Assembly: GCF_032444005.1 (NCBI RefSeq)
Contig: NC_091289.1
Location: forward strand, 5,890,001-5,954,000
Origin: Ranitomeya imitator
Lineage: Eukaryota
Direction of reading: 5' to 3'
Length of the DNA: 64,000 nucleotides
Of the stretch, positions 10,125 through 42,075 are shown piece by piece. The notes beneath the pieces are model-generated. The model ran no database searches, had not been told where the DNA came from, and saw only the letters and a program-made list of their open reading frames with translations. Position 1 is the stretch's first letter, and the number at the start of each line of letters is the position of its first letter. A program made the translations under genes and the position numbers.

Positions 10125-10311
10125 GGCCTTGTTCACACTAGCAGTATTTGGTCAGTATTTTACATCAGTATTTGTAGCCAAAACCAGGAGTGGAACAATT
10201 AGAGGAAAAGTATAATAGAAACATATGCACCACTTCTGCATTTATCACCCACTCCTGGTTTTGGCTACAAATACTGATGTAAAATACTGACCCAATACTG
10301 CTAGTGTGAAC
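10125..10311. mobile_element. Foldback MITE; right end merges into the 20-bp array
   Basis: ~60-bp near-perfect inverted arms gttcacactagcagtatt...aaaaccaggagtgg / cccactcctggtttt...aatactgctagtgtgaac. Confidence 0.8.
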
Positions 10312-11490
10312 TGTGGACCGGACGTGTGAACTGTGGACCGGACGTGTGAACTGTGGACCGGACGTGTGAAATGTGGACCGGACGTGTGAACCGTGGACTG
10401 GACGTGTGAAATGTGGACCGGACGTGTGAAATGTGGACCGGACGTGTGAAATGTGGACCGGACGTGTGAACCGTGGACTGGACGTGTGAAATGTGGACCG
10501 GACGTGTGAAATGTGGACAGGACGTGTGAAATGTGGACCGGACGTGTGAACCGTGGACTGGACGTGTGAAATGTGGACCGGACGTGTGAACCGTGGACTG
10601 GACGTGTGAAATGTGGACCGGACGTGTGAAATGTGGACAGGACGTGTGAAATGTGGACCGGACGTGTGAACCGTGGACTGGACGTGTGAAATGTGGACCG
10701 GACGTGTGAACCGTGGACCGGACGTGTGAAATGTGGACCGGACGTGTGAAATGTGGACCGGACGTGTGAACCGTGGACCGGACGTGTGAACCGTGGACCG
10801 GACGTGTGAACCGTGGACTGGACGTGTGAAATGTGGACCGGACGTGTGAACCGTGGACCGGACGTGTGAACCGTGGACCAGACGTGTGAAATGTGGACCG
10901 GACGTGTGAACCGTGGACCGGACGTGTGAACCGTGGACCGGACGTGTGAACCGTGGACCAGACGTGTGAAATGTGGACCGGACGTGTGAACCGTGGACCG
11001 GACGTGTGAACCGTGGACCGGACGTGTGAACCGTGGACCGGACGTGTGAAATGTGGACCGGACGTGTGAAATGTGGACCGGACGTGTGAACCGTGGACCG
11101 GACGTGTGAACCGTGGACTGGACGTGTGAAATGTGGACCGGACGTGTGAAATGTGGACCGGACGTGTGAACCGTGGACCGGACGTGTGAAATGTGGACCG
11201 GACGTGTGAACCGTGGACTGGACGTGTGAAATGTGGACCGGACGTGTGAACCGTGGACCGGACGTGTGAAATGTGGACCGGACGTGTGAACCGTGGACTG
11301 GACGTGTGAAATGTGGACCGGACGTGTGAAATGTGGACCGGACGTGTGAAATGTGGACAGGACGTGTGAAATGTGGACCGGACGTGTGAAATGTGGACCG
11401 GACGTGTGAACCGTGGACCGGACGTGTGAAATGTGGACCGGACGTGTGAAATGTGGACCGGACGTGTGAACCGTGGACCGGACGTGTGTA
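10304..11490. repeat. 20-bp minisatellite (~59 units)
   Basis: Unit ggacgtgtgaa(ct/at/cc)gtggacc. Confidence 0.97.
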
Positions 11491-11725
11491 CTGGACCTGT
11501 GGACCGAGGCCAGGATGCCAGTGAAGACCCCTCTGTTTTCACTCGTGGCCCCTGCAGCTGAGGAGACATGACCCCACTGCCAGTGTCTCAGGTCCTCGCT
11601 GCCCCTTCCGCCATCAGGTTTGTTTACACAGAGAACATAAATATTTAAGAATCAGAACAGAATTCTGTAAATATTGAAGTCAGAGAAAGATACAATGTAA
11701 CAACCAGAACCCTCCGCTGGCTCCT

Positions 11726-11927
11726 CCCACAATCCCGCCCCTGGGAACGTCCCGGCAGCAGATTGGACGGCGCAGAGTGAGAAGTTGTAGTGGGCGGGGC
11801 CGCAGTGATTGACGGCAGCGCTGCTCCAGGCTAAATTGTGAGGAGGAAGATGTGAGGCCGCGACTGCCCGGAGCACAGGGGAGGACGGCGGTCAGGATGA
11901 GCTCCAAGCCCGGCGCGGAGCGGGACA
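11726..11927 (+). pseudogene. Duplicated orphan promoter and putative exon 1 of the BORCS6-like gene (no downstream BORCS6 exons follow)
   Basis: Copy of 20600-20801 (offset 8874): GC boxes, inverted CCAAT, ATG at 11897, donor gtgagt at 11928. The copy is cut off by the junction at 13767. Confidence 0.65.
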
Positions 11928-12002
11928 GTGAGTGCGGAGGCCGCGGGTGTGTCCGGGCCTGTAACATCGTGTACAACACAGCGACCAATCCGGAGATGCT
12001 GG

Positions 12003-13500
12003 GGGTGATGTGCTGCCGACCGTGTGTGAGGGGAAGGGGGGCGATGTGCTGCCGACCGTGTGTGAGGGGAAGGGTGGTGATGTGCTGCCGACTGTGTGTG
12101 AGGGGAAGGGTGGTGATGTGCTGCCGACTGTGTGTGAGGGGAAGGGTGGTGATGTGCTGCCGACCGTGTGTGAGGGGAAGGGTGGCGAAGTGCTGCCGAC
12201 CGTGTGTGAGGGGAAGGGGGGCGATGTGCTGCCGACTGTGTGTGAGGGGAAGGGGGGCGATGTGCTGCCGACTGTGTGTGAGGGGAAGGGTGGTGATGTG
12301 CTGCCGACCGTGTGTGAGGGGAAGGGTGGTGATGTGCTGCCGACTGTGTGTGAGGGGAAGGGGGGTGATGTGCTGCCGACCGTGTGTGAGGGGAAGGGGG
12401 GCGATGTGCTGCCGACCGTGTGTGAGGGGAAGGGGGGCGATGTGCTGCCGACCGTGTGTGAGGGGAAGGGTGGCGAAGTGCTGCCGACCGTGTGTGAGGG
12501 GAAGGGTGGCGAAGTGCTGCCGACCGTGTGTGAGGGGAAGGGGGGTGATGTGCTGCCGACCGTGTGTGAGGGGAAGGGGGGCGATGTGCTGCCGACCGTG
12601 TGTGAGGGGAAGGGTGGCGAAGTGCTGCCGACCGTGTGTGAGGGGAAGGGTGGCGAAGTGCTGCCGACCGTGTGTGAGGGGAAGGGGGGTGATGTGCTGC
12701 CGACCGTGTGTGAGGGGAAGGGGGGTGATGTGCTGCCGACCGTGTGTGAGGGGAAGGGGGGTGATGTGCTGCCGACCGTGTGTGAGGGGAAGGGTGGCGA
12801 AGTGCTGCCGACCGTGTGTGAGGGGAAGGGTGGCGAAGTGCTGCCGACCGTGTGTGAGGGGAAGGGTGGTGATGTGCTGCCGACCGTGTGTGAGGGGAAG
12901 GGTGGTGATGTGCTGCCGACCGTGTGTGAGGGGAAGGGTGGTGATGTGCTGCCGACCGTGTGTGAGGGGAAGGGGGGTGATGTGCTGCCGACCGTGTGTG
13001 AGGGGAAGGGGGGCGATGTGCTGCCGACCGTGTGTGAGGGGAAGGGTGGCGAAGTGCTGCCGACCGTGTGTGAGGGGAAGGGTGGCGAAGTGCTGCCGAC
13101 CGTGTGTGAGGGGAAGGGTGGTGATGTGCTGCCGACCGTGTGTGAGGGGAAGGGTGGCGAAGTGCTGCCGACGTGTGTGAGGGGAAGGGGGGTGATGTGC
13201 TGCCGACCGTGTGTGAGGGGAAGGGTGGCGAAGTGCTGCCGACCGTGTGTGAGGGGAAGGGTGGCGAAGTGCTGCCGACCGTGTGTGAGGGGAAGGGTGG
13301 TGATGTGCTGCTGACCGTGTGTGAGGGGGAAGGGTGGTGATGTGCTGCTGACCGTGTGTGAGGGGAAGGGTGGTGATGTGCCGCCGACCGTGTGTGAGGG
13401 GAATGGGGGTGATGTGCTGCCGACCGTGTGTGAGGGAAAGGGGGGGTGACGTGCTGCCGACCGTGTGTGAGGGGGAAGGGTGGCGATGTGCTGCCGACCG
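12003..13500. repeat. 36-bp G-rich minisatellite (~41 units)
   Basis: Unit gatgtgctgccgaccgtgtgtgaggggaagggtggt. Confidence 0.97.
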
Positions 13501-13767
13501 TGGAATAAAGGTGCGCTGTGAGATTGCTGAAAAGCCTGTGTCACTGAGTAATGAGGGAAGGTTTTCTGTCGGTTGTTCTACGTGCGCAGCCAGATGTCCC
13601 CGTGTGCTGGCGAATGCTCCCAGGATGGCGATTACCCGGCTGACCAAGAGGTGGCGCTCAGCAGTGACACCTCCTGGTCACCAAAGCGCTAAAAATGGCA
13701 AACACTGAACCCGCTGCAATGTGAGAGCGACTCGCTGAGCACAAGATTCCGTCTTTTGTCGCTTCTA

Positions 13768-19738: not shown

Positions 19739-19925
19739 GGCCTTGTTCACACTAGCAGTATTTGGTCAGTATTTTACATCAGTATTTGTAGCCAAAACCA
19801 GGAGTGGAACAATTAGAGGAAAAGTATAATAGAAACATATGCACCACTTCTGCATTTATCACCCACTCCTGGTTTTGGCTACAAATACTGATGTAAAATA
19901 CTGACCCAATACTGCTAGTGTGAAC
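19739..19925. mobile_element. Foldback MITE (duplicated copy)
   Basis: Same arms as 10125-10311. Confidence 0.8.
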
Positions 19926-20364
19926 TGTGGACCGGACGTGTGAACTGTGGACCGGACGTGTGAACTGTGGACCGGACGTGTGAACTGTGGACCGGACGTG
20001 TGAAATGTGGACCGGACGTGTGAAATGTGGACCGGACGTGTGAACCGTGGACTGGACGTGTGAAATGTGGACCGGACGTGTGAAATGTGGACCGGACGTG
20101 TGAAATGTGGACCGGACGTGTGAAATGTGGACCGGACGTGTGAAATGTGGACCGGACGTGTGAAATGTGGACCGGACGTGTGAAATGTGGACCGGACGTG
20201 TGAAATGTGGACCGGACGTGTGAAATGTGGACCGGACGTGTGAAATGTGGACAGGACGTGTGAAATGTGGACCGGACGTGTGAAATGTGGACCGGACGTG
20301 TGAACCGTGGACCGGACGTGTGAAATGTGGACTGGACGTGTGAACCGTGGACCGGACGTGTGTA
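19918..20364. repeat. 20-bp minisatellite (~22 units)
   Basis: Same unit as 10304-11490, much shorter array. Confidence 0.96.
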
Positions 20365-20599
20365 CTGGACCTGTGGACCGAGGCCAGGATCCCAGTGAAG
20401 ACCCCTCTGTTTTCACTCGTGGCCCCTGCAGCTGAGGAGACATGACCCCACTGCCAGTGTCTCAGGTCCTCGCTGCCCCTTCCGCCATCAGGTTTGTTTA
20501 CACAGAGAACATAAATATTTAAGAATCAGAACAGAATTCTGTAAATATTGAAGTCAGAGAAAGATACAATGTAACAACCAGAACCCTCCGCTGGCTCCT

Positions 20600-20700
20600 C
20601 CCACAATCCCGCCCCTGGGAACGTCCCGGCAGCAGATTGGACGGCGCAGAGTGAGAAGTTGTAGTGGGCGGGGCCGCAGTGATTGACGGCAGCGCTGCTC
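20600..20700 (+). promoter_or_regulatory. CpG-island promoter of the BORCS6-like gene
   Basis: GC boxes cccgcccc (20608) and gggcgggg (20666), inverted CCAAT (attgg, 20636), and CpG-rich context just upstream of ATG 20771. Confidence 0.55.
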
Positions 20701-20770
20701 CAGGCTAAATTGTGAGGAGGAAGATGTGAGGCCGCGACTGCCCGGAGCACAGGGGAGGACGGCGGTCAGG

Positions 20771-23700
20771 ATGAGCTCCAAGCCCGGCGCGGAGCGGGAC
20801 AGTGAGTGCGGAGGCCGCGGGTGTGTCCGGGCCTGTAACATCGTGTACAACACAGCGACCAATCCGGAGATGCTGGGGGTGATGTGCTGCCGACCGTGTG
20901 TGAGGGGAAGGGGGGCGATGTGCTGCCGACTGTGTGTGAGGGGAAGGGTGGTGATGTGCTGCCGACCGTGTGTGAGGGGAAGGGTGGTGATGTGCTGCCG
21001 ACTGTGTGTGAGGGGAAGGGTGGTGATGTGCTGCCGACTGTGTGTGAGGGGAAGGGTGGTGATGTGCTGCCGACCGTGTGTGAGGGGAAGGGTGGCGAAG
21101 TGCTGCCGACCGTGTGTGAGGGGAAGGGTGGCGAAGTGCTGCCGACCGTGTGTGAGGGGAAGGGGGGCGATGTGCTGCCGACTGTGTGTGAGGGGAAGGG
21201 TGGTGATGTGCTGCCGACCGTGTGTGAGGGGAAGGGTGGTGATGTGCTGCCGACCGTGTGTGAGGGGAAGGGTGGTGATGTGCTGCCGACCGTGTGTGAG
21301 GGGAAGGGGGGTGATGTGCTGCCGACCGTGTGTGAGGGGAAGGGGGGCGATGTGCTGCCGACCGTGTGTGAGGGGAAGGGGGGCGATGTGCTGCCGACCG
21401 TGTGTGAGGGGAAGGGTGGCGAAGTGCTGCCGACCGTGTGTGAGGGGAAGGGTGGCGAAGTGCTGCCGACCGTGTGTGAGGGGAAGGGGGGTGATGTGCT
21501 GCCGACCGTGTGTGAGGGGAAGGGGGGCGATGTGCTGCCGACCGTGTGAGAGGGGAAGGGTGGCGAAGTGCTGCCGACCGTGTGTGAGGGGAAGGGTGGC
21601 GAAGTGCTGCCGACCGTGTGTGAGGGGAAGGGGGGTGATGTGCTGCCGACCGTCTGTGAGGGGAAGGGGGGTGATGTGCTGCCGACCGTGTGTGAGGGGA
21701 AGGGGGGTGATGTGCTGCCGACCGTGTGTGAGGGGAAGGGTGGCGAAGTGCTGCCGACCGTGTGTGAGGGGAAGGGTGGCGAAGTGCTGCCGACCGTGTG
21801 TGAGGGGAAGGGTGGTGATGTGCTGCCGACCGTGTGTGAGGGGAAGGGTGGTGATGTGCTGCCGACCGTGTGTGAGGGGAAGGGGGGTGATGTGCTGCCG
21901 ACCGTGTGTGAGGGGAAGGGGGGCGATGTGCTGCCGACCGTGTGTGAGGGGAAGGGTGGCGAAGTGCTGCCGACCGTGTGTGAGGGGAAGGGTGGCGAAG
22001 TGCTGCCGACCGTGTGTGAGGGGAAGGGTGGCGAAGTGCTGCCGACGTGTGTGAGGGGAAGGGGGGTGATGTGCTGCCGACCGTGTGTGAGGGGAAGGGT
22101 GGCGAAGTGCTGCCGACCGTGTGTGAGGGGAAGGGTGGCGAAGTGCTGCCGACCGTGTGTGAGGGGAAGGGTGGTGATGTGCTGCTGACCGTGTGTGAGG
22201 GGGAAGGGTGGTGATGTGCTGCCGACCGTGTGTGAGGGGAAGGGTGGTGATGTGCCGCCGACCGTGTGTGAGGGGAATGGGGGTGATGTGCTGCCGACCG
22301 TGTGTGAGGGAAAGGGGGGGTGACGTGCTGCCGACCGTGTGTGAGGGGGAAGGGTGGCGATGTGCTGCCGACCGTGGAATAAAGGTGCGCTGTGAGATTG
22401 CTGAAAAGCCTGTGTCACTGAGTAATGAGGGAAGGTTTTCTGTCGGTTGTTCTACGTGCGCAGCCAGATGTCCCCGTGTGCTGGCGAATGCTCCCAGGAT
22501 GGCGATTACCCGGCTGACCAGGAGGTGGCGCTCAGCAGTGACACCTCCTGGTCACCAAAGCGCTAAAAATGGCAAACACTGAACCCGCTGCAATGTGAGA
22601 GCGACTCGCTGAGCACAAGATTCCGTCTTTTGTCGCTTCTATAAACCGGTTTCGGCGCTGGATGCTGTGAAGCGACTGCTCCGTTCTTCGGGCGCCTTCA
22701 CCTTGCACTGCTGATGAGGGTTGTAGTTTTCAGCAGCTGTTTAGGTTCCTATGAATTGGATGTAATTGTAACAAACCCTCAGCTGAGAAGTGGCTCTTCA
22801 ATGCGGAAGAGGGTGGACCCCACTAGTGATTTTTCTGGGGGCTCTAATGAGGTTTCCTGTGTGAACGTGTACCTACAATCTCCAGAACTCGTTTCCCTGT
22901 GTTGTAGCTGACATCAATGTCCGCCATCATGCGCTGCAGAGAAGCAGAGCCGACATCCCCCCCATCGACCTGGAGGTGTTGAAGGACCTGGAGATCCTCA
23001 CTCAGGAAGTTGCACTAAAAGTCGATCAGATGATGAAAAGTTTGAGCGGCACAATCCAAAATGTAAGATCGTACATGAGCGCTATCAGCTGTAGCAGGGG
23101 AGGCGATCAGCGAGACCACGATCAATGGCGCGTGCGACTGATATGGACAAATGCCCCAGAGAGCGGCCCCCTCGTATCTCCAGAGCTGACCACACCTTTA
23201 TTTGCAGATGACGGCGCTCAGCGTGGGATACATCCAGACGTACAGGGATTCTGTGGACAGTCTCGGGGAGTCAGTGGACATGAGCATCAAGGTAGGAGAC
23301 GGAACGACAAGTAGAGAAGGTCGGATACCCCCCCCCCCCCCCCTATTTAATAAAACTCCAATCCTGGAACATCTTTTGTTAAAATTCTACATTGTACTGT
23401 TCCTACTCCAGAGCTGCACTCACTATTCTGCTGGTGCAGTCACTGTACATACAGGATCTAACTCAGGATCAGTAATGTATTATACTCCAGAGCTGCACTC
23501 ACTATTCTGCTGGTGCAGTCACTGTGTACATAGATTACTGATCCTGAGTTACATCCTGTATTATACCCCAGAGCTGCACTCACTATTCTGCTGGTGCAGT
23601 CACTGTGTACATAATTACATTACTGATCCTGAGTTACATCCTGTATTATACCCCAGAGCTGCACTCACTATTCTGCTGGTGCAGTCACTGTGTACATACA

Positions 23701-29054: not shown

Positions 29055-32000
29055 GTATCACATCACACAGGAGAGGATTAGATACACGGCTCAGCAGTCA
29101 GTATCACACAGGAGAGGATTAGATACACGGCTCAGCAGACAGGATCACAGGAGAGGATTAGATACACAGCTCAGCAGACAGTATCACACAGGATAGGATT
29201 AGATACACGGCTCAGCAGTCAGTATCACACAGGAGAGGATTAGATACACGGCTCAGCAGACAGTATTACACAGGAGGGGATTAGATACACGGCTCAGCAG
29301 ACAGTATCACACAGGATAGGATTAGATACACGGCTCAGCAGTCAGTATCACACAGGACAGGATTAGATACACGGCTCAGCAGGCAGTATCACACAGGAGA
29401 GGATTAGATACACGGCTCAGCAGTCAGTATCACACAGGAGAGGATTAGATACACGGCTCAGCAGTCAGTATCACACAGGAGAGGATTAGATACACGGCTC
29501 AGCAGTCAGTATCACACAGGAGGGGATTAGATACACGGCTCAGCAGTCAGTATCACACAGGAGAGGATTAGATACACGGCTCAGCAGTCAGTATCACACA
29601 GGAGAGGATTAGATACACGGCTCAGCAGTCAGTATCACACAGGAGGGGATTAGATACACGGCTCAGCAGACAGTATCACACAGGATAGGATTAGATACAC
29701 GGCTCAGCAGACAGTATCACACAGGATAGGATTAGATACACAGCTCAGCAGTCAGTATCACACAGGAGAGGATTAGATACACAGCTCAGCAGACAGTATC
29801 ACACAGGATAGGATTAGATACACAGCTCAGCAGTCAGTATCACACAGGAGAGGATTAGATACACGGCTCAGCAGTCAGTATCACACAGGAGAGGATTAGA
29901 TACACGGCTCAGCAGACAGTATCACACAGGATAGGATTAGATACACAGCTCAGCAGTCAGTAGCACACAGGATAGGATTAGATACACGGCTCAGCAGTCA
30001 GTATCACACAGGAGAGGATTAGATACACGGCTCAGCAGACAGTATTACACAGGAGGGGATTAGATACACGGCTCAGCAGTCAGTATCACACAGGAGGGGA
30101 TTAGATACACGGCTCAGCAGACAGTATCACACAGGATAGGATTAGATACACGGCTCAGCAGACAGTATCACACAGGATAGGATTAGATACACAGCTCAGC
30201 AGTCAGTATCACAGGAGAGGATTAGATACACAGCTCAGCAGACAGTATCACACAGGAGAGGATTAGATACAGAGCTCAGCAGACAGTATCACGCAGGATA
30301 GGATTAGATACACAGCTCAGCAGACAGTATCACAGAGGAGAGAATTAGATACACGGCTCTGCAGTCAATATCACACAGGAGAGGATTAGATACACGGCTC
30401 AGCAGTCAGTATCACACAGGATAGGATTAGATACACGGCTCAGCAGTCAGTATCACACAGGATAGGATTAGATACACGGCTCAGCAGTCAGTAGCACACA
30501 GGATAGGATTAGATACACGGCTCAGCAGTCAGTATCACACAGGAGAGGATTAGATACACAGCTCAGCAGTCAGTATCACAGGAGAGGATTAGATACACAG
30601 CTCAGCAGACAGTATCACACAGGAGAGGATTAGATACACAGCTCAGCAGACAGTATCACACAGGAGAGGATTAGATACAGAGCTCAGCAGACAGTATCAC
30701 GCAGGATAGGATTAGATACACAGCTCAGCAGACAGTATCACAGAGGAGAGATTAGATACACGGCTCAGCAGACAGTATCACGCAGGAGAGAATTAGATAC
30801 ACGGCTCTGCAGTCAATATCACACAGGAGAGGATTAGATACACGGCTCAGCAGTCAGTATCACACAGGATAGGATTAGATACACGGCTCAGCAGTCAGTA
30901 TCACACAGGATAGGATTAGATACACGGCTCAGCAGTCAGTATCACACAGGAGAGGATTAGATACACGGCTCAGCAGACAGTATCACACAGGATAGGATTA
31001 GATACACGGCTCAGCAGTCAGTAGCACACAGAATAGGATTAGATACACGGCTCAGCAGTCAGTATCACACAGGAGAGGATTAGATACACAGCTCAGCAGT
31101 CAGTATCACAGGAGAGGATTAGATACACAGCTCAGCAGACAGTATCACACAGGAGAGGATTAGATACACAGCTCAGCAGACAGTATCACACAGGAGAGAA
31201 TTAGATACAGAGCTCAGCAGACAGTATCACGCAGGATAGGATTAGATACACGGCTCAGCAGTCAGTATCACACAGGAGAGGATTAGATACACAGCTCAGC
31301 AGACAGTATCACAGGAGAGGATTAGATACACAGCTCAGCAGACAGTATCACACAGGAGAGGATTAGATACAGAGCTCAGCAGACAGTATCACGCAGGATA
31401 GGATTAGATACACAGCTCAGCAGACAGTATCACAGAGGAGAGATTAGATACACGGCTCAGCAGACAGTATCACGCAGGAGAGAATTAGATACACGGCTCT
31501 GCAGTCAATATCACACAGGAGAGGATTAGATACACGGCTCAGCAGTCAGTACCACACAGGATAGGATTAGATACACGGCTCAGCAGTTAGTATCACACAG
31601 GAGAGGATTAGATACACGGCTCAGCAGTCAGTATCACACAGGAGAGGATTAGATACACGGCTCAGCAGTCAGTATCACACAGGAGAGGATTAGATACACG
31701 GCTCAGCAGACAGTATCACACAGGATAGGATTAGATACACGGCTCAGCAGTCAGTAGCACACAGGATAGGATTAGATACACGGCTCAGCAGTCAGTATCA
31801 CACAGGAGAGGATTAGATACACGGCTCAGCAGTCAGTATCACACAGGAGAGGATTAGATACACAGCTCAGCAGACAGTATCACACAGGATAGGATTAGAT
31901 ACACAGCTCAGCAGACAGTATCACACAGGATGGGATTAGATACACAGCTCAGCAGTCAGTATCACACAGGAGAGGATTAGATACACGGCTCAGCAGTCAG

Positions 32001-33562
32001 TATCACACAGGAGAGGATTAGATACACGGCTCAGCAGACAGTATCACACAGGAGAGGATTAGATACACGGCTCAGCAGTCAGTATCACACAGGATGGGAT
32101 TAGATACACAGCTCAGCAGACAGTATCACACAGGATAGGATTAGATACACGGCTCAGCAGTCAGTATCACACAGGAGAGGATTAGATACACGGCTCAGCA
32201 GTCAGTATCACACAGGATGGGATTAGATACACAGCTCAGCAGACAGTATCACACAGGATAGGATTAGATACACGGCTCAGCAGACAGTATCACACAGGAT
32301 GGGATTAGATACACAGCTCAGCAGTCAGTATCACACAGGAGAGGATTAGATACACGGCTCAGCAGTCAGTATCACACAGGAGAGGATTAGATACACGGCT
32401 CAGCAGACAGTATCACACAGGATAGGATTAGATACACGGCTCAACAGTCAGTAGCACACAGGATAGGATTAGATACACGGCTCAGCAGTCAGTATCACAC
32501 AGGAGAGGATTAGATACACAGCTCAGCAGTCAGTATCACAGGAGAGGATTAGATACACAGCTCAGCAGACAGTATCACACAGGAGAGGATTAGATACACA
32601 GCTCAGCAGACAGTATCACACAGGAGAGGATTAGATACAGAGCTCAGCAGACAGTATCACGCAGGATAGGATTAGATACACAGCTCAGCAGACAGTATCA
32701 CAGAGGAGAGATTAGATACACGGCTCAGCAGACAGTATCACGCAGGAGAGAATTAGATACACGGCTCTGCAGTCAATATCACACAGGAGAGGATTAGATA
32801 CACGGCTCAGCAGTCAGTATCACACAGGATAGGATTAGATACACGGCTCAGCAGTCAGTATCACACAGGATAGGATTAGATACACGGCTCAGCAGTCAGT
32901 ATCACACAGGATAGGATTAGATACACGGCTCAGCAGTCAGTATCACACAGGATAGGATTAGATACACGGCTCAGCAGTCAGTATCACACAGGAGAGGATT
33001 AGATACACGGCTCAGCAGTCAGTATCACACAGGAGAGGATTAGATACACGGCTCAGCAGACAGTATCACACAGGATAGGATTAGATACACGGCTCAGCAG
33101 TCAGTAGCACACAGGATAGGATTAGATACACGGCTCAGCAGTCAGTATCACACAGGAGAGGATTAGATACACAGCTCAGCAGTCAGTATCACAGGAGAGG
33201 ATTAGATACACAGCTCAGCAGACAGTATCACACAGGAGAGGATTAGATACACAGCTTAGCAGACAGTATCACACAGGAGAGAATTAGATACAGAGCTCAG
33301 CAGACAGTATCACGCAGGATAGGATTAGATACACAGCTCAGCAGACAGTATCACAGAGGAGAGATTAGATACACGGCTCAGCAGACAGTATCACACAGGA
33401 TATGATTAGATACACGGCTCAGCAGTCAGTAGCACACAGGATAGGATTAGATACACGGCTCAGCAGTCAGTATCACACATGATAGGATTAGATACACAGC
33501 TCAGCAGTCAGTATCACACAGGAGAGGATTAGATACATGGCTCAGCAGACAGTATCACACAG
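29055..33562. repeat. 41-bp satellite, left arm (~110 units)
   Basis: Unit ggattagatacacggctcagcagtcagtatcacacaggaga, with higher-order variant blocks. Confidence 0.97.
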
Positions 33563-34414
33563 ACTGCAGAGACCCGTGTGTCGTAACCAGTGCCTTCCCC
33601 CGTCCCACCACTCCGTAATAAAAGATACCAACAATCCTGGATGGGTTGAACAGGTCGGTCACAGTTTTATTATTTGCAAAGTAGAGAAGGGCAATTACAC
33701 ATCGTGACGCACTCATTGCTGAAGGCCCCAGCCGACGACCGCTGGGCCAGCAAGCCGATGAGAGGTTACGAACCTTTGCCCCCCTCTACCTACCGCTGTG
33801 ACGTATATAAAAGAACGTCAACATTTATTTTTTTTTATAAAATTTAAAATTCAAAACATTTTAACAGTAATTGCACAGTACATTTACCAGTTTATAAGGG
33901 AGGGAGGGTGGGACAACAGCTTCCAAGGGTCAGCCGGGGAGAAAGAGGGAGAACCTGGCCCGGTCACTAGAATTTAACCCCTGAGGGTGTGGCCTGACTC
34001 ACCTCTTCTCCCCGGTTGGTCCGCTGGGCGTCCCAATCATGACCTCACCTGGGGAGGTAGTGGGAGGGGGGAATTGGGCACTGCACAGATTTCCCCTCTA
34101 GCTATCCCTTAGGGGCTCTGCAGTCAGAGGCACGTTCCTTATACAGTACCGTGCCTACCAGACTGCAGAGACCCGTGTGTCGTAACCAGTGCTTTCCCCC
34201 GTCCCACCACTCCGTAATAAAAGATACCAACAAACCTGGATGGGTTGAACAGGTCTGTCAGTTTATTATTTGCAAAGTAGAGAAGGGCAATTACACATCA
34301 CGACGCACTCATTGCTGAAGGCCCCAGCCGACCACCGCTGGGCCAGCAAGCCGATGAGAGGTTATGAACCTTTGCCCCCCTCTACCTACCGCCACGGAGG
34401 ATCATGTGTATGAC

Positions 34415-35023
34415 CTACACAGGACTCCGACCCCCACACAACATCATTAGAGCCTGTTCAACACCATCCCGCAAACCCTCCAAGAATATGTCGAGCCCGA
34501 TGTCCGTGAGGTGGATGCCATCTGGTCTCAGCAAAGCAAAATTGTTCCCTTCTAGCTCTTGGTGTCGAACCACAATGCCGTAATTTTCTCTCACAAACTT
34601 CGACATCTTTGTGTTAATCCTTTTTCTTGCGTTTTCGATGGCTTTTACGTCCTTAGCTCCGTGCCAGACCGCTCGAGGTATTATCTCGGACCACACCACC
34701 ACCATATCTGGTAATAAACAGACAAACCGATCGATGTCCGTTGACATTACTGTGTACAGCTCGGCCCCTTTCCGCTTGCCCAAATCATTGCCTCCGGCAT
34801 GTAGCACCAGAACCACCGGCCCCTTGGCCTTCTTAGCGATGTCGACCAACTCCGGGAAGATCTGACGCCACCGGAGCCCTCTGATGCCCCTCCAGTTGAC
34901 TTCCAAATTCGGGAAGCCAAAATTGGTTCCCCCCGTCCTGAGTTTGGCCCTTTTGCATGCCCAGTAGACAAAAGAATGCCCCACTACCCAGACTGTGGGC
35001 CTACAGCTGCCTGTAATAGACAA
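34415..35023 (-). CDS. SGNH/GDSL-family hydrolase (esterase-like) ORF of the Ngaro element, ~200 aa
   Basis: Blocks VWVVGHSF (I), GIRG (II), LHAGGNDL (III) and DGIHL (V, DxxH). No ATG at the start; a splice acceptor lies at 35011/35010. Confidence 0.88.
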   Translation of the reverse strand: MSITGSCRPTVWVVGHSFVYWACKRAKLRTGGTNFGFPNLEVNWRGIRGLRWRQIFPELVDIAKKAKGPVVLVLHAGGNDLGKRKGAELYTVMSTDIDRFVCLLPDMVVVWSEIIPRAVWHGAKDVKAIENARKRINTKMSKFVRENYGIVVRHQELEGNNFALLRPDGIHLTDIGLDIFLEGLRDGVEQALMMLCGGRSPV

Positions 35024-35029
35024 AAAGTG

Positions 35030-38000
35030 TTAGAGCAGGTCTGGTCTTATGTATCTTGCAAAGCATGCGGATTTCCAGCGGCCCATTCTCTGCACCTCGA
35101 CTTCCGATACCCCCGCTCTAGCTGCTTCGGTCGCCGCCCCTATTCGGAATGAATGTGTCCCATATTCCTTTGGAGCCACGCCGAGTGCCTCTAGGCACTG
35201 TCTAAAGATCGCTTGAAATTGATATTTAGTAAGAGGGGACCCGTCCGTGTGTGAAAGAAAGAATCTACCCGGACGTCTTACTAGCGCATAGTTTTTAACT
35301 ATTTTTACGGGGCATATTGGGACGCCTGACGCCTTGACCAATACCCATGTCCCCCTCCCGGTGGGGTCGCATTTGGATCTCCGTACTCTAATGCGCAGAG
35401 CTTCGCTGCATATGACGAGGTCTTCATTGATTAAGCCGCCTACTGATGCGGATTTTGACTGGGGCACTAATTCGCTGATGCGAAGCGCCCCGAAGAAGGC
35501 GATTGCGAACGCTGCAGATATCAGCGTTGCCTCGTATTGCGATTTGCACACCGATGAAGAAATTGCAATTATGTCGGCCAGCAGCCTTAAGGAAACTGGG
35601 CGACGGCATTCCTGACTAGGTTGCCGCCTTCTCCAGCCTTTAACGGCTTCTCTGATGAAAAAATATTTGGTTACGTCCACCCACCCCAGCAGCTGAAAGA
35701 AGAAGGCTATTCCCGACAGATGACGTTGCGCTAATGTCCCCGACGCACCTCCCCGCCTGAGCTTTTCTAAGAGTTCTACTAAGACGTCGCATCTCGCCCG
35801 GTCGCACCTATCGACTGGTCTTCCTTGCGTTAGCGAGCACCACTCCTCCCACGCCTTACCGTAAACCTGCCAAGTCGCCGGTGTCACCGAAGCGCGAATC
35901 AAGGGCATCAGTGATTGGCCACCATGTCCAAGAGGGAAGGAGGACACCGCAGGCCCGACGTTCGCGCCCTGGGGAGGAAGAGTTTGAATGCCTTTGAACC
36001 TCGCAGGTGCTCTATTTGACTGGCGGGTACATCTGGCCGCAGGGTGTCCACCTCCGCAGGAGGAGCATTCGTGTCTATATTTACAGGACCCTTGGAAACG
36101 GCAGTATCCATCGTTAAACAGTAAGCAGGCCCCAGGTCCGCGTACGACCACTGTATTCTGGCCTGCTGCTGTTGAGTGATAAGTGGTCGCTGCAGAAGAG
36201 GGGGGTTGTTTTTGGGACAACATCAGTCGTAACCAAACGTCCGTCGCTTTTACCCCCCAGCCCAAATCCGGTTGCATGGCCAACCGCCTGCGGAACTCCT
36301 CGTCGTACCGTTTCCATGCCGCCCCGCTGTGGCACTTATATGAATTATAAATTAGATCTTGGTAAATAAATAATTCGGAACAACGCTCTGGGTGCTTTTG
36401 GCCCATTATACATCCGAGAACCGCGAAGGCCTGGAGCCAGTTATTCATCGTTTGAGCTATTTTTGGTTTGCTCCTATCTTGTAACCGCTCGCCTACTCTC
36501 CTTTCCTTGTCCACGGACTGTTGGTCGGCAGATAACAGTGACCATATATCTACGTATCCATTATCCCAAATTTTTTGCCTTGTCTCTAACTCAACATGCG
36601 CTCCCAGTGGGCTAACTCCACAGAAAAATGCATCCTTGTGCAGACTAGCTGCCTGGGTGGTGCTAGTGTCAGTTGGTACGCCTGGGCGTGTCAGCTGCTG
36701 AACTAGGGTCTTAATAGCGGCCGCCAGCTCGCTTTCTCCCACATTTTGTATTGTAGAGCGCTCACCGACATCAAGGAACTCACCGCTGTCAGATGCCGGC
36801 CGAGTGTCTCCGGACGGAGGTACTCTGGCTCCTGCCGTGGCGCTGTCCTGGTGCTGGCCGCCCGCCCAGGAGGATGAAGATGGCAGGCCAGCGGCCAGCG
36901 CCGTGGCACGGGGATGTATTCTGCTGCATTGTGTCTGGTGCCGAGCGTCCCCCGGAGAGGGAGGTTCTCCGGCTTCTATTGTCTCGATGGTTCGATGCTG
37001 GCTGGTGGACCGGGGAGGTATGTATGGCGTGTCTCCCCGTGCGTCAGCCCAGGACGGAGCACGTGACGGATGACCTCTGTCGTCTGCTCGAGGATGAGAG
37101 GCTATTGGGGCGCCGATCTCGGCCTGATCGGTAACGGGGGGTGTCAGTGTCTGTTCCCACCGGGTACCCGCTCTGGGTGTCCGGTGAGACTGCCGTCTTT
37201 CGGCATGTGACCGGTACTGCCCGTTGTAACTCCCCGATGTATCTGAGCCGGTTGTGGATGGCGAGCGCCATCTGGAGGAGCGGGATCTGTGGTGGCTCCT
37301 GCGGCTCCTGTATGAGTGGTGTCGGCTTCTGGAGTGGGAATAGCGACAGCTAGAGGGACAGCGGGGACGGTGGTGGGAGTCTACTGATGAGGGTGAGGAT
37401 GATCTGCGGCATCTATGCCTGCGATCGCCCTGTCTAGGGGTTGCGTTAGGTGCATTCACCTCGGGAGTAGGGGGGACGTTACCTTGGCCATGGGGCGTGA
37501 GTGGCGGTGCAGGGGGTAGAGCCGGGGAAGGTGCGGTGACTGTTAAGCTAGCACCGCAATAGGGTGAGCGCAAAAGGGCGGGGACTGATAGGGAACTGTC
37601 TGCGATTAGCGTTTGGGAGCATGGGGGTGTTGGCGGCGCGTAATTTAATGCGGCTGTGTTAGTGTTTGGTGCGACTGTGTGCGTGCTTGGTGCGTACATT
37701 CCTGGCCGCGGAGCGTGCTGGTCGGTCTGGATAGACCAGTCATCACGCTCTGCGGCCGTGTTCGTGGCTCTGGCCCCCGACCGCCCGCCCCCCCGCACAG
37801 GCAACGCCGATGTGCCTGCTTGGGTGACGCGGCGGACCAGGAGTGGGCTGGCCAGAGGTCCACGGTGCTGCAGTCCTGGTGAGGCAGGGGACGCTGCAGC
37901 ACACCGTGGAGGGACCTGGCTCGGGGGGCTTGTGAGCGCTGTTTTTGAGGCGCCCCCCCGACCGATTTGGCGGGTTGGGGCCCCGCCGGCTAAAACTGTG

Positions 38001-38866
38001 CTGCTGATGCTTCCCGGGGAGTTAGTGGGCGGGGCTTGGTGGTCCCAAGCCGGCATCAGGGAGAGGGGACTCCCTGACGCTGCAGGGGACCAGAGGTGTG
38101 CCTGGGCCGGCTGCCCACGCTGGCCCCCGATCCCCCCGAGCGGCTGACACGCCGCCGAGGGGACAGAGGCAGCGGGCGGCCCCCTGCCTGTCCCCACACT
38201 GCAGTGGGATTGCCGGGAGGAAGTGGGGCCGGAAGTGGGTGTGTCCCGCCCAGCCCGCACTGCACTCTGGGAGGCAGGGCGGGCCTGAACAGAATGAGAG
38301 GGCGGCGGGGGTTCCAATACGCGCGTCGGGCCCCGGGTTTCAGAGCGGGGACAGGAAGTGCAGTATGGAGCAGGCACCTGGCACCGGCGGGCAGCGGCGC
38401 CAGAAGCAAGCGCCGAGACGTCCGCCGCGCATCCCGGTGCCACACGTGGGGCAGAAGCACGGCAACTTAGCAGGGCCGGCTCCCCTCCGACACGTAGACG
38501 CACGGGAGGACGGGAAGACCGCCCCGAACGTCTGCCCTGGGGCACCGCTGCGGCCCGGTCAGCCGGAGCGCCGGGGGCTAGTAGCGGGAGCCCCGGACGA
38601 CCGGAGTCTGCAGAGGCAGGGGCCGATACGATGAGCCGGTGAGTGGGGGTTAGTAGCGCTGGGGAGACAGGAGAGGACGAGGCCCCAGGAGGGGGGGTGT
38701 GCAGGGATGGAGCCCTGGGGGACGACGGGGAGGCCTGAGGGGAGGCTAGGGGGTGAGGAGAGGGCACAGGAAGGTGAGCGCCCAGACCAGGATTAGGGGA
38801 TCGCAGCCATTGCTCACCTTCCTGTGCAGCTCCCTGCTGTAGGGCCTCGGTCGTAGGGGCAGCCAT
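35030..38866 (-). CDS. Gag-tyrosine recombinase fusion ORF (1278 aa from ATG 38866)
   Basis: Low-complexity N-terminus, then a DIRS/Ngaro Gag core (YVDIWSLL...NWLQAFAV...WKRYDEEFR...CLLFNDGYC...CKYRHECSSCGGGHPAARC). It is followed by a YR with the full catalytic set: GALRISELV (R), RSKCD (K), GTHSFRIGAAT (HxxR), MGRWKS (W), ARYIRP (Y). No stop codon. Confidence 0.88.
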   Translation of the reverse strand: MAAPTTEALQQGAAQEGEQWLRSPNPGLGAHLPVPSPHPLASPQASPSSPRAPSLHTPPPGASSSPVSPALLTPTHRLIVSAPASADSGRPGLPLLAPGAPADRAAAVPQGRRSGRSSRPPVRLRVGGEPALLSCRASAPRVAPGCAADVSALASGAAARRCQVPAPYCTSCPRSETRGPTRVLEPPPPSHSVQARPASQSAVRAGRDTPTSGPTSSRQSHCSVGTGRGPPAASVPSAACQPLGGIGGQRGQPAQAHLWSPAASGSPLSLMPAWDHQAPPTNSPGSISSTVLAGGAPTRQIGRGGASKTALTSPPSQVPPRCAAASPASPGLQHRGPLASPLLVRRVTQAGTSALPVRGGGRSGARATNTAAERDDWSIQTDQHAPRPGMYAPSTHTVAPNTNTAALNYAPPTPPCSQTLIADSSLSVPALLRSPYCGASLTVTAPSPALPPAPPLTPHGQGNVPPTPEVNAPNATPRQGDRRHRCRRSSSPSSVDSHHRPRCPSSCRYSHSRSRHHSYRSRRSHHRSRSSRWRSPSTTGSDTSGSYNGQYRSHAERRQSHRTPRAGTRWEQTLTPPVTDQAEIGAPIASHPRADDRGHPSRAPSWADARGDTPYIPPRSTSQHRTIETIEAGEPPSPGDARHQTQCSRIHPRATALAAGLPSSSSWAGGQHQDSATAGARVPPSGDTRPASDSGEFLDVGERSTIQNVGESELAAAIKTLVQQLTRPGVPTDTSTTQAASLHKDAFFCGVSPLGAHVELETRQKIWDNGYVDIWSLLSADQQSVDKERRVGERLQDRSKPKIAQTMNNWLQAFAVLGCIMGQKHPERCSELFIYQDLIYNSYKCHSGAAWKRYDEEFRRRLAMQPDLGWGVKATDVWLRLMLSQKQPPSSAATTYHSTAAGQNTVVVRGPGACLLFNDGYCRFQGSCKYRHECSSCGGGHPAARCTRQSNRAPARFKGIQTLPPQGANVGPAVSSFPLGHGGQSLMPLIRASVTPATWQVYGKAWEEWCSLTQGRPVDRCDRARCDVLVELLEKLRRGGASGTLAQRHLSGIAFFFQLLGWVDVTKYFFIREAVKGWRRRQPSQECRRPVSLRLLADIIAISSSVCKSQYEATLISAAFAIAFFGALRISELVPQSKSASVGGLINEDLVICSEALRIRVRRSKCDPTGRGTWVLVKASGVPICPVKIVKNYALVRRPGRFFLSHTDGSPLTKYQFQAIFRQCLEALGVAPKEYGTHSFRIGAATEAARAGVSEVEVQRMGRWKSACFARYIRPDLL

Positions 38867-39091
38867 GGTGGTCAGGAGATCAGGGACGACAACAGCTTCC
38901 AAGGGTCAGCCGGGAAGAAAGAGGGAGAACCTGGCCCGGTCACTGGAATTTAACCCCTGAGGGTGTGGCCAGACTCACCTCTTCTCCCCGGTTGGTCCGC
39001 TGGGCGTCCCAATCATGACCTCACCTGGGGAGGTAGTGGGAGGGGGGAACTGGGCACTGCACAGATTTCCCCTCTAGCTATCCCTTAGGGG

Positions 39092-42075
39092 CTCAGCAGT
39101 ATCACACAGGAGAGGATTAGATACACAGCTCAGCAGTATCACACAGGAGAGGATTAGATACACAGCTCAGCAGTATCACACAGGATAGGATTAGATACAC
39201 GGATCTGCAGTCATCACACAGGAGAGGATTAGATACACGGATCTGCAGTCATCACACAGGAGAGGATTAGATACACGGATCTGCAGTCATCACACAGGAG
39301 AGGATTAGATACACAGGTCAGCAGTCAGTATCACACAGGAGAGGATTAGATACACAGCTCAGCAGTATCACACAGGAGAGGATTAGATACACGGATCTGC
39401 AGTCATCACACAGGAGAGGATTAGATACACGGATCTGCAGTCATCACACAGGAGAGGATTAGATACACAGGTCAGCAGTCAGTATCACACAGGAGAGGAT
39501 TAGATACACAGCTCAGCAGTCAGTATCACACAGGAGAGGATTAGATACACGGATCAGCAGTCAGTATCACACAGGAAAGGATTAGATACACGGCTCAGCA
39601 GTCAGTATCACACAGGAAAGGATTAGATACACAGCTCAGCAGTCAGTATCACACAGGAAAGGATTAGATACACGGCTTAGCAGTCAGTATCACACAGGAG
39701 AGGATTAGATACACGGCTCAGCAGTCAGTATCACACAGGATAGAATTAGATACACAGCTCAGCAGACAGTATCACACAGGAGAGGATTAGATACACAGCT
39801 CAGCAGACAGTATCACACAGGAGAGGATTAGATACACAGCTCAGCAGACAATATCACACGGGATAGGATTAGATACGGCTCAGCAGTCAGTATCACACGG
39901 GATAGGATTAGATACACGGCTCAGCAGACAGTATCACACAGGAGAGGATTAGATACACGGCTCAGCAGACAGTATCACACAGGAGAGGATTAGATACACG
40001 GCTCAGCAGTCAGTATCACACAGGAGAGGATTAGATACACGGCTCAGCAGACAGTAACACACAGGAGAGGATTAGATACACAGCTCAGCAGACAGTATCC
40101 CACAGGAGAGGATTAGATACACGGCTCAGCAGACAGTATCACACAGGAGAGGATTCGATACATGGCTCAGCAGACAGTATCACACAGGAGAGGATTAGAT
40201 ACACGGCTCTGCAGTTAGTATCACACAGGAGAGGATTAGATGCACGGCTCAGCAGTCAGTATCACACAGGATAGGATTAGATACATGGTTCAGCAGACAG
40301 TATCACACAGGATAGGATTAGATACACGGTTCAGCAGACAGAATCACACAGGATAGGATTAGATACACGGCTCAGCAGACAGAATCACACAGGATAGGAT
40401 TAGATACACGGCTCAGCAGACAGAATCACACAGGATAGGATTAGATACATGGTTCAGCAGTCAGTATCACACAGGATAGGATTAGATACACAGTTCAGCA
40501 GACAGTATCACACAGGATAGGATTAGATACATGGCTCAGCAGACAGTATCACACAGGTTAGGATTAGATACATAGTTCAGCAGACAGAATCACACAGGAT
40601 AGGATTAGATACACAGCTCAGCAGTCAGTATCACACAGGATAGGATTAGATACATGGCTCAGCAGACAGTATCACACAGGATAGGATTAGATACATGGCT
40701 CAGCAGTCAGTATCACACAGGATAGGATTAGATACACGGCTCAGCAGTCAGTATCACACAGGATAGGATTAGATACATGGCTCAGCAGACAGTATCACAC
40801 AGGATAGGATTAGATACACAGTTCAGCAGACAGTATCACACAGGATAGGATTAGATACATGGCTCAGCAGACAGTATCACACAGGTTAGGATTAGATACA
40901 TAGTTCAGCAGTCAGTATCACACAGGATAGGATTAGATACATGGCTCAGCAGTCAGTATCACACAGGATAGGATTAGATACACGGCTCAGCAGTCAGTAT
41001 CACACAGGATAGGATTAGATACATGGTTCAGCAGTCAGTATCACACAGGATAGGATTAGATACACAGTTCAGCAGACAGTATCACACAGGATAGGATTAG
41101 ATACATGGCTCAGCAGACAGTATCACACAGGTTAGGATTAGATACATAGTTCAGCAGACAGAATCACACAGGAGAGGATTAGATACATGGCTCAGCAGTC
41201 AGTATCACACAGGATAGGATTAGATACACGGCTCAGCAGTCAGTATCACACAGGATAGGATTAGATACATGGTTCAGCAGTCAGTATCACACAGGATAGG
41301 ATTAGATACACAGCTCAGCAGTCAGTATCACACAGGAGAGGATTATATACACAGCTCAGCAGACAGTATCACACAGGAGAGGATTAGATACACGGCTCAG
41401 CAGACAGTATCACACAGGAGAGGATTAGATACACAGCTCAGCAGTCAGTATCACACAGGATAGGGTTAGATACATGGTTCAGCAGTCAGTATCACAGGAT
41501 AGGATTAGATACACGGCTCAGCAGTCAGTATCACACAGGATAGGATTAGATACACGGCTCAGCAGACAGTATCACACAGGAGAGGATTAGATACACGGCT
41601 CAGCAGTCAGTATCACACAGGATAGGATTAGATACATGGTTCAACAGTCAGTATCACACAGGATAGGATTAGATACATGGTTCAGCAGTCAGTATCACAC
41701 AGGAGAGGATTAGATACACGGCTCAGCAGTCAGTATCACACAGGATAGGATTAGATACACGGCTCAGCAGTCAGTATCACACAGGAGAGGATTAGATACA
41801 CGGCTCAGCAGTCAGTATCACACAGGATAGGATTAGATACATGGTTCAGCAGTCAGTATCACACAGGAGAGGATTAGATACATGGTTCAGCAGTCAGTAT
41901 CACACAGGAGAGGATTAGATACACGGCTCAGCAGTCAGTATCACACAGGAGAGGATTAGATACACGGCTCAGCAGTCAGTATCACACAGGATAGGATTAG
42001 ATACACGGCTCAGCAGTCAGTATCACACAGGATAGGATTAGATACACGGCTCAGCAGTCAGTATCACACAGGATG
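39092..42075. repeat. 41-bp satellite, right arm (~73 units)
   Basis: Same family as 29055-33562, with different variant units (37-bp units, ggatctgcagtcatc, catggttcagc). Confidence 0.97.

What the first reader, a model, noticed from the sequence alone, without database searches (positions are those of the whole stretch)
34112..34174. att-like hairpin at the B1/A2 junction whose arm matches the host satellite: possible satellite-targeted integration
Seen: ggggctctgcagtc (34112-25) and gactgcagagaccc (34161-74) form a 14-bp inverted repeat with 1 mismatch. They enclose a second stem (aggcacg/cgtgcct) and a 15-nt loop. The same arms form the element's outer ends (33562-75; 39088-101). The satellite unit contains ggctcagcagtc, 11/12 identical to the arm, and some units are exact (ggctctgcagtc, e.g. 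~30355). At the right end the element merges into the satellite within this motif; at the left end only cag is shared. The 35-bp spacer is absent from both outer ends. Known: tyrosine recombinases act on inverted binding arms flanking a spacer, and the internal junction templates the circle junction in the Ngaro model. Inference: the satellite presents ~180 pseudo-att arms and may be a preferred safe-harbour target.
Basis: partly seen in the sequence, partly recalled or inferred. Interest (0 to 1): 0.7.

Follow-up and report, generated by a model that had tools for sequence, protein, structure and literature searches.

The report
Ngaro transposon end-joint hairpin in satellite
The hairpin is real and is the internal place where the two 14-base inverted ends of a frog Ngaro-type jumping gene meet, but this single copy's junctions do not fit a clean recombinase crossover in the look-alike satellite motif, so satellite targeting stays unproven.

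Summary
The 14-bp inverted repeat (34112-25 / 34161-74, one mismatch), the inner 7-bp stem and the 15-nt loop are there. The arm recurs at the left outer end. The satellite carries an 11/12 look-alike, and the 35-nt spacer is missing from both outer ends.

The element (33562-39094, minus strand) is an RT-less Ngaro-type tyrosine-recombinase element. It has split direct repeats, a gag-recombinase ORF and an SGNH hydrolase ORF. It sits in a 41-bp satellite of a dendrobatid frog, probably Ranitomeya.

I read the palindrome as the element's internal copy of its end-to-end joint, the counterpart of the DIRS-1 internal complementary region and a plausible recombinase site.

Satellite targeting is not shown.
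- Only 74 of about 183 units match the arm at 1 mismatch or fewer, all as single direct half-sites.
- The left junction lies 12 nt past the nearest motif, which is not hybrid.
- A 13-bp direct repeat flanks the insert, so the event was not a conservative crossover in the motif.
- The right outer arm now carries satellite letters.
- The repeats differ by 2-4%, so the insertion is old.

New here: 37/38-bp satellite units occur only in the 350 bp next to the right end.

The parts
29062..33562 (.). Left part of the 41-bp satellite array, about 110 units
   Evidence: Tandem Repeats Finder: period 41, 110 copies, 93% matches. Units listed one by one.
33550..33562 (+). Left copy of the 13-bp exact direct repeat CAGTATCACACAG that flanks the insert. 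Its last G is also the first base of the terminal arm.
   Evidence: identical to 39097-39109. Removing 33563-39096 plus one copy restores the satellite phase.
33562..33575 (+). Left outer terminal arm GACTGCAGAGACCC (the 3' end of B2 on the element's sense strand)
   Evidence: (pair I6), 8 and 49: identical to the internal arm at 34161-34174.
33560..33796 (-). Split direct repeat, outer copy (B2 in element orientation)
   Evidence: 95% identical to 34159-34392, with 9 substitutions and one 3-nt indel.
33797..33911 (-). Unique AT-rich segment between A2 and B2. It holds AATAAA on the sense strand at 33829-33824.
   Evidence: Read directly. It lies in neither repeat pair.
33912..34125 (-). Split direct repeat, internal copy (A2)
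   Evidence: 98% identical to 38888-39100.
34112..34174 (.). The finding: a 63-bp palindrome made of a 14-bp arm, a 35-nt spacer and a 14-bp arm. The spacer holds the inner stem (34128-34134 with 34150-34156) and the loop (34135-34149).
   Evidence: (pair I7).
34161..34392 (-). Split direct repeat, internal copy (B1)
34415..35023 (-). ORF with a GDSL/SGNH hydrolase domain, as in amphibian Ngaro elements
   Evidence: Pfam PF13472, E = 1.2e-5, 26.3 bits, below the curated cut-off of 32.9. tblastn of the PF13472-bearing Ranitomeya imitator protein P0014 gives 52% identity at 34433-34921.
35030..37699 (-). Gag-like protein fused to a Cre-like tyrosine recombinase, with no RT or RNase H. The open frame runs on up to 38902 as low-complexity sequence.
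   Evidence: The start at 37699 is taken from the match to P0013.
38888..39094 (-). Split direct repeat, outer copy (A1). It ends at GGGGCTC; from 39095 on the letters are the satellite's.
   Evidence: 4 substitutions in 207 nt, then T/A at 39095, where the satellite has A.
39088..39101 (+). Right outer arm, a hybrid of element and satellite (GGGGCTCAGCAGTA)
39097..39109 (+). Right copy of the 13-bp direct repeat
39101..39442 (.). Block of short satellite units (three of 37 bp, five of 38 bp, one of 41 bp). Such units occur nowhere else in the 7.5 kb of this satellite. The 38-bp units end TCTGCAGTC joined directly to ATCACAC.
39097..42074 (.). Right part of the 41-bp satellite array

Best explanation
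The 63-bp palindrome is the built-in end-to-end joint of a Ngaro-type tyrosine-recombinase element.

On its sense (minus) strand the element reads A1 - gag/recombinase - SGNH hydrolase - B1 - [hairpin] - A2 - AT-rich stretch - B2. The end of B and the start of A carry 14-bp inverted repeats. These are the element's terminal inverted repeats. They meet head to head only at the internal B1/A2 junction, around a 35-nt stem-loop.

By analogy with the DIRS-1 internal complementary region and the published Ngaro/PAT model, this joint serves to rebuild and join the ends of the cDNA. The two arms are the likeliest binding sites of the element's Cre-like recombinase. That step is inferred, not shown.

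This copy is an old, RT-less insertion in a very abundant 41-bp satellite. The arm's likeness to the satellite motif is real. It probably explains why the right end now runs into the satellite in register, either through a homology-assisted join or through later exchange between arm and satellite. It does not show that the family targets the satellite.
For: - Split direct repeats have the arms exactly at their boundaries.
- The palindrome folds far better than shuffles, both as DNA and as sense-strand RNA, and such repeats are rare by chance.
- The recombinase aligns to Cre/Tre over the HxxR...W segment and ends in ARYIR. Pfam PF00589 scores 29.6 bits, above its cut-off.
- The gag part matches the gag of an RT-bearing relative, and the SGNH ORF sits downstream as in Xenopus Ngaro families (PMC9210276).
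- The DIRS-1 internal complementary region is experimentally essential for retrotransposition (PMC7192593). Short junction sequences are thought to define DIRS integration sites (PMC3266345).
- For later exchange with the satellite: the letters at 39095 and 39101 are the satellite's, and 37/38-bp units occur only beside the right end.
- For an old insertion: the repeat pairs differ by about 2% and about 4%.
Against: - The model predicts that the circle junction copies the internal joint, spacer included. No spacer letters are found at either outer end beyond a shared CAG.
- A 35-bp spacer is far longer than the 6-8 bp of characterised Cre/FLP/Xer core sites (my own knowledge).
- No binding or recombination data exist for any Ngaro recombinase.
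- Only one copy was examined.
- Contig depth shows a multi-copy family in several dendrobatid samples, but no ends of other copies could be read.
Confidence: 0.6

Rival explanations
1. The recombinase treats the satellite motif GGCTC(A/T)GCAGTC as a pseudo-att arm, so this family integrates preferentially into the satellite.
For: - The best satellite-to-element local match in 5.5 kb falls on the terminal arm (14 nt, 1 mismatch). Only 20 of 300 shuffled units score as well anywhere. The arms cover about 1% of the element, so the joint chance is roughly 1e-3 (my inference).
- The right end merges with the satellite in register.
- 74 units offer the motif at 1 mismatch or fewer.
- Target preference in Ngaro elements has a precedent in Cafeteria, where it appears tied to ORF1/gag (PMC8547959).
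Against: - The nearest satellite motif to the left junction (33535-33546) is unhybridised and lies 12 nt from the arm.
- The flanks carry a 13-bp direct repeat, so the event was not conservative.
- The spacer is missing at both ends.
- The satellite has no inverted partner arm at any lox-like spacing (read).
- The satellite's summed contig depth on the two end bins is about 1e6, against about 1e3 for the element, so chance hits are not rare. That depth is not a copy number.
- Unchecked notes of this scan place other Ngaro copies of this genome in a host gene (s1-307433).
Confidence: 0.2
2. The hairpin acts mainly at the RNA or single-stranded cDNA level, for example in self-priming, strand transfer, or holding the two ends together. 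It is not the recombinase's crossover site. Integration of this copy was then a non-conservative join of a linear cDNA with short microhomologies: CAG on the left and GCTC or GCAGT on the right.
For: - The fold is very stable on the sense strand.
- DIRS-1 intermediates are mostly linear single-stranded cDNA, and a 3' hairpin has been proposed as a primer (PMC7192593).
- The junctions show microhomology plus a 13-bp duplication or a 28-nt loss, a pattern typical of end joining rather than site-specific recombination.
Against: - The arms lie exactly at the element's ends, as expected of recombinase binding sites.
- The element keeps an apparently intact recombinase.
- No data show priming at this site.
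Confidence: 0.15
3. Movement as DNA. The RT-less element excises and reintegrates as a DNA circle between satellite units, as Cryptons or integrative elements do. The 13-bp repeat CAGTATCACACAG would then be the shared core of attL and attR.
For: - No RT in any frame.
- The layout reads: satellite arm-like motif + core + element arm on the left, and element arm + core + satellite on the right.
Against: - In a tandem repeat, any insertion can be written as a short duplication.
- The split repeats and the deletion-derivative structure point to retrotransposition with RT supplied in trans, which is shown for DIRS-1 (PMC7192593).
- The 2-4% divergence of the repeat pairs is what a retro-copy accumulates with age.
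Confidence: 0.05

Closest known systems
Ngaro-like retrotransposons of amphibians (e.g. DIRS-53_XT and DIRS-54_XT of Xenopus; PMC9210276)
   Same: - Split direct repeats in the order A1-[ORFs]-B1A2B2, of similar size (here 213 and 235 bp; 236 and 152 bp in DIRS-53_XT).
- Gag-like ORF, tyrosine recombinase, and an extra SGNH hydrolase ORF after the recombinase.
- No methyltransferase domain.
   Different: - This copy has no RT/RNase H; gag runs straight into the recombinase.
- A 35-nt stem-loop separates B1 from A2, and a 115-nt AT-rich stretch separates A2 from B2.
- Whether Xenopus families have 14-bp inverted arms at the repeat ends could not be checked, because no sequences were held.
DIRS-1 internal complementary region / circular junction (Cappello model; PMC7192593, PMC3266345)
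   Same: - An internal sequence that repeats both element ends side by side.
- It is thought to template the end joint of the replication intermediate and to define the recombinase's site.
   Different: - In DIRS-1-like elements the two halves overlap on a 3-bp junction, and elements begin and end with that trinucleotide.
- Here the halves are 35 nt apart, and the ends share at most CAG with the internal joint.
- The repeats are direct and split, not inverted terminal repeats.
Cre/loxP-type core sites (13-8-13), and folded single-strand sites of tyrosine recombinases such as integron attC and CTX phage attP (my own knowledge)
   Same: - Two inverted arms of about 13-14 bp.
- A Cre-like catalytic domain.
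- If the inner 29-nt hairpin is extruded, the arms are 6 nt apart.
   Different: - As duplex DNA the spacer is 35 bp.
- No evidence of binding, cleavage positions or strand preference.
Target preference of Cafeteria Ngaro types for endogenous virophages (PMC8547959)
   Same: A Ngaro lineage with a non-random choice of integration site.
   Different: - There the preference was shown on 80 copies and appears tied to ORF1/gag, not to sequence likeness with the element's ends.
- Here there is one copy and no statistics.

Membership tests
Ngaro-like tyrosine-recombinase retrotransposon (order DIRS) | Split direct repeats in the order A1-[ORFs]-B1-A2-B2 | tested here: met
   33912-34124 matches 38888-39100 at 98%, and 33560-33796 matches 34159-34392 at 95%. 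The order fits the minus strand.
Ngaro-like tyrosine-recombinase retrotransposon (order DIRS) | Encodes a tyrosine recombinase | tested here: met
   PF00589 at 29.6 bits, above its cut-off of 27.1. Aligns to Cre/Tre over the HxxR...W segment, and the C-terminus reads ARYIR.
Ngaro-like tyrosine-recombinase retrotransposon (order DIRS) | Encodes reverse transcriptase and RNase H | tested here: not met
   No RVT_1 hit in the ORF. tblastn with the RT-bearing relatives P0012 and P0011 matches only the gag part, in any frame. This copy is a non-autonomous derivative of the family.
Ngaro-like tyrosine-recombinase retrotransposon (order DIRS) | No methyltransferase domain; in amphibians an SGNH hydrolase ORF after the recombinase | tested here: met
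   PF13472 at E = 1.2e-5, below the curated cut-off. The homologous R. imitator protein P0014 carries PF13472. No methyltransferase hit.
Ngaro-like tyrosine-recombinase retrotransposon (order DIRS) | No target-site duplication | tested here: inconclusive
   A 13-bp exact direct repeat flanks the insert. In a 41-bp tandem repeat this cannot be told apart from a 28-nt target loss.
Tyrosine-recombinase core site (lox/FRT/dif type) | Two inverted binding arms of about 11-14 bp | tested here: met
   14-bp arms with 1 mismatch (pair I7).
Tyrosine-recombinase core site (lox/FRT/dif type) | Short (6-8 bp) crossover region between the arms | tested here: not met
   The spacer is 35 bp in duplex form. 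It shrinks to 6 nt only if the inner hairpin 34128-34156 is extruded, which is my inference.
Tyrosine-recombinase core site (lox/FRT/dif type) | Bound and recombined by the cognate enzyme | not testable with these tools
   Needs binding and recombination assays.
Site-specific integration into the 41-bp satellite | The target holds a sequence like the element's site | tested here: met
   GGCTCAGCAGTC is 11/12 identical to the arm. 74 satellite units match at 1 mismatch or fewer, 4 of them exactly, all on the + strand. Only single half-sites are present.
Site-specific integration into the 41-bp satellite | Conservative, reciprocal crossover: target contiguous across the insert, and hybrid sites at both junctions | tested here: not met
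   The left junction is 12 nt past an unhybridised motif, a 13-bp duplication (or 28-nt loss) is present, and the spacer is lost.
Site-specific integration into the 41-bp satellite | Independent copies recur in the same target | not testable with these tools
The Logan contigs are about 150-nt unitigs that break at the repeat ends. Pattern scans found nothing.

The most novel reading that the evidence does not exclude
The Cre-like recombinase of this RT-less Ngaro derivative works on a folded site: two 14-nt arms brought to a 6-nt spacing when the inner hairpin extrudes. It also uses the satellite's GGCTCAGCAGTC half-site as a preferred partner. The 41-bp satellite would then be a landing pad, and perhaps a place of DNA-level excision and reintegration, with CAGTATCACACAG as the shared core.
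Probability: 0.12. Interest if true: 0.75.

Novelty: new member of a known kind. Interest (0 to 1): 0.3.

Why it matters
How tyrosine-recombinase retrotransposons choose and enter their targets is still largely a model. Of the steps in that model, the papers read here report an experimental test only for the DIRS-1 internal complementary region. No Ngaro recombination site is described in those papers.

A family with clear 14-bp terminal arms, a hairpin joint and an intact Cre-like recombinase is a convenient substrate for such tests. If the satellite preference were real, it would be an example of sequence-directed retroelement integration into heterochromatic repeats.

As it stands, the case is an ordinary Ngaro end-joint plus one suggestive but inconsistent insertion.

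Tried and rejected
1. A second copy in the window: blastn of the element against the window found only its own internal repeats.

2. Flanks of relatives through their proteins.

3. Reads. The one sequencing-run run and the one read-laying run gave Logan unitigs of about 150 nt.
   - They show a multi-copy family and a hugely abundant satellite.
   - The listed loose ends are almost all satellite continuing through the empty site.
   - The single non-satellite loose end (X3, before 33560, ending CCCTAC, 2 contigs) may be another subfamily's internal spacer.

4. Exact-pattern scans for the 22-nt start of the arm-bearing repeat in metagenome contigs and viral contigs: 0 hits.

5. Earlier notes searched by sequence: blank.

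6. Satellite born from the element's end: rejected. Likeness does not extend beyond the 14-nt motif. A gapped 21-nt match to the other arm scores below the shuffle mean.

7. A second, inverted arm in the satellite at 6-8 nt or 35 nt spacing: none seen (read).

8. Goodwin and Poulter 2004 (the Ngaro paper) and the Xenopus supplements are not held. Whether other Ngaro families have such arms or a spacer could not be checked.

Full report
**What is there**

The window holds a 41-bp satellite from 29062 to 42074. It is interrupted between 33562 and about 39096 by a 5.5-kb element. The element has two pairs of direct repeats:
- 33560-33796 matches 34159-34392 at 95%.
- 33912-34124 matches 38888-39100 at 98%.

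On the minus strand this reads A1 - ORFs - B1 - A2 - B2, the split-direct-repeat layout of Ngaro/PAT-type tyrosine-recombinase retrotransposons (PMC9210276, PMC8547959).

The minus strand carries a long open frame, 35030-38902.
- Its last 325 residues are a tyrosine recombinase. PF00589 scores above its cut-off. The sequence aligns to Cre/Tre across HSFRIGAA...GRW and ends ARYIR.
- The preceding ~200 residues match the gag part of an RT-bearing relative, P0012.
- A second ORF, 34415-35023, is GDSL/SGNH-like, as in amphibian Ngaro families (PMC9210276).
- No RT or RNase H is left in any frame.
- The closest proteins come from dendrobatid frogs. One Ranitomeya imitator protein is 89-94% identical.

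**The observation**

- The arms at 34112-25 and 34161-74 form a 14-bp inverted repeat with one mismatch.
- Inside lie a 7-bp stem and a 15-nt loop.
- The stretch folds about 5 SD better than shuffles, both as DNA and as sense-strand RNA.
- Repeats of this quality are rare in simulated sequence.
- The arms lie exactly at the ends of the split repeats. They are therefore the element's terminal inverted repeats, brought head to head at the internal B1/A2 junction.

Two details need correcting.
- The right outer 'arm' (39088-39101) agrees with the internal arm only as far as GGGGCTC. The two differing letters are the satellite's. With about 2% divergence between the repeat copies, a satellite origin of those letters is far more likely than mutation (my inference).
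- 74 satellite units, not about 180, match the 12-nt arm core at 1 mismatch or fewer. All are on the + strand.

**Is the likeness to the satellite more than chance?**

The best local match between the satellite unit and the whole element, on either strand, is the arm: GGCTC(A/T)GCAGTCAG, 14 nt with 1 mismatch. 20 of 300 shuffled units do as well somewhere in the 5.5 kb. The arms make up about 1% of the element, so the coincidence is roughly 1 in 1000 (my inference). It is real but not overwhelming, given how many insertions a genome scan sees. Likeness does not extend further, so the satellite is not derived from the element's end.

**Do the junctions fit a recombinase crossover in the motif?**

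They do not fit simply.
- On the right, the element's last repeat runs into the satellite in register with the motif.
- On the left, the satellite ends at ...ATCACACAG, 12 nt beyond its nearest motif (33535-33546). That motif shows no element letters.
- The insert 33563-39096 is flanked by an exact 13-bp direct repeat, CAGTATCACACAG. Removing the insert and one repeat copy restores the satellite phase. In a tandem repeat this equals a 28-nt target loss. Either way the target is not contiguous, as a conservative exchange would leave it.
- The 35-nt spacer, which the published model would copy into the circle junction, is at neither end.
- The satellite offers no inverted partner arm.
- The repeat pairs differ by about 2% and about 4%. 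The insertion is therefore old, and the junctions may have been reworked since.

**A new observation**

Short satellite units of 37 and 38 bp occur only in the 350 bp next to the right end (39101-39442). They occur nowhere else in the 7.5 kb of this satellite.
- The 38-bp units end in TCTGCAGTC, the last nine letters of the arm, joined directly to ATCACAC. This is the same point at which the element meets the satellite.
- This suggests exchange between the arm and neighbouring units after insertion, or local repair at insertion.
- It may mean that the original right end carried the full arm.
- It is suggestive only. The T variant also occurs in four distant units.

**Most likely reading**

The palindrome is the Ngaro counterpart of the DIRS-1 internal complementary region. 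That region is experimentally required for retrotransposition (PMC7192593) and is thought to fix the joint on which the recombinase acts (PMC3266345).
- That the arms are the recombinase's binding sites is inferred from their position, their length (like the 13-bp arms of loxP; my own knowledge) and the Cre-like enzyme.
- If the inner hairpin is extruded, the arms are 6 nt apart. This would give a lox/dif-like geometry on single-stranded or cruciform DNA. It is an idea to test, not a result.

Satellite targeting remains a minority possibility, at about 0.2. Two further rivals cannot be excluded from one copy: a purely RNA/cDNA-level role with an end-joining type of insertion, and DNA-level movement between satellite units.

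**Limits**

- The contigs laid on the stretch are about 150-nt unitigs that break at repeat ends.
- Pattern scans of the metagenome and viral collections found nothing.
- One search does show that the element, including its RT-less interior, is multi-copy in samples of at least three organisms. On the two end bins that hold satellite flank, the summed contig depth (not a copy number) is about a thousand times the element's.
- Unchecked notes of this scan mention other Ngaro copies of this genome in a host gene and elsewhere. Their family is unknown.

**Verdict**

The structure is an expected part of a known kind of element. The att-like reading is plausible, and the satellite-targeting reading is unproven and in part contradicted by this copy's junctions.

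Noticed in passing
window 39101-39442: 37-bp and 38-bp variants of the 41-bp satellite occur only in the ten units next to the element's right end. The 38-bp units join TCTGCAGTC (the arm's last nine letters) directly to ATCACAC. A block in the order 37-38-38-41 is repeated.
   Followed up: partly
window 38764-38827: A second strong hairpin inside the element: a perfect 16-nt inverted repeat (GCACAGGAAGGTGAGC and its complement) with 32 nt between the arms. It lies in the leader just downstream of A1 on the sense strand.
   Followed up: no
window 33797-33911: A2 and B2 are not adjacent. A 115-nt AT-rich unique stretch lies between them and holds AATAAA on the sense strand (33829-33824). Transcripts may therefore end before B2.
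   Followed up: no
window 36779-38902 (minus strand): The long frame upstream of the gag-like domain is open for about 700 codons of Pro/Ala/Ser/Arg-rich low-complexity sequence at 64-69% G+C. A Ranitomeya imitator protein (P0013) starts at the Met at 37699 and is 89% identical. No RT remnant is found.
   Followed up: partly
window 33500-33688 and 38981-39160 (the two end bins that hold the satellite flanks): In Logan contigs of three differently labelled organisms, the summed word depth on these end bins is about 1e6 (X1, X2), about 3e5 (X4) and 2-5e4 (X3). The element's interior reads about 1e3, about 1e3 and about 40. This is a very abundant satellite shared by related frogs.
   Followed up: no
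window 33689-34255: The split-repeat region has 4-8 times the contig depth of the element's interior in X1 and X2. Two copies per element explain only part of this. Solo repeats, or other subfamilies sharing the repeats, are likely, as described for Cafeteria Ngaros (PMC8547959).
   Followed up: no
window 10304-13502 and 19918-22376: Two near-identical blocks each carry a 20-bp and a 36-bp tandem repeat, and the 36-bp arrays have the same copy number (41.6). They sit among 57-bp minisatellite arrays, so a segment of about 10 kb is duplicated in the window.
   Followed up: no
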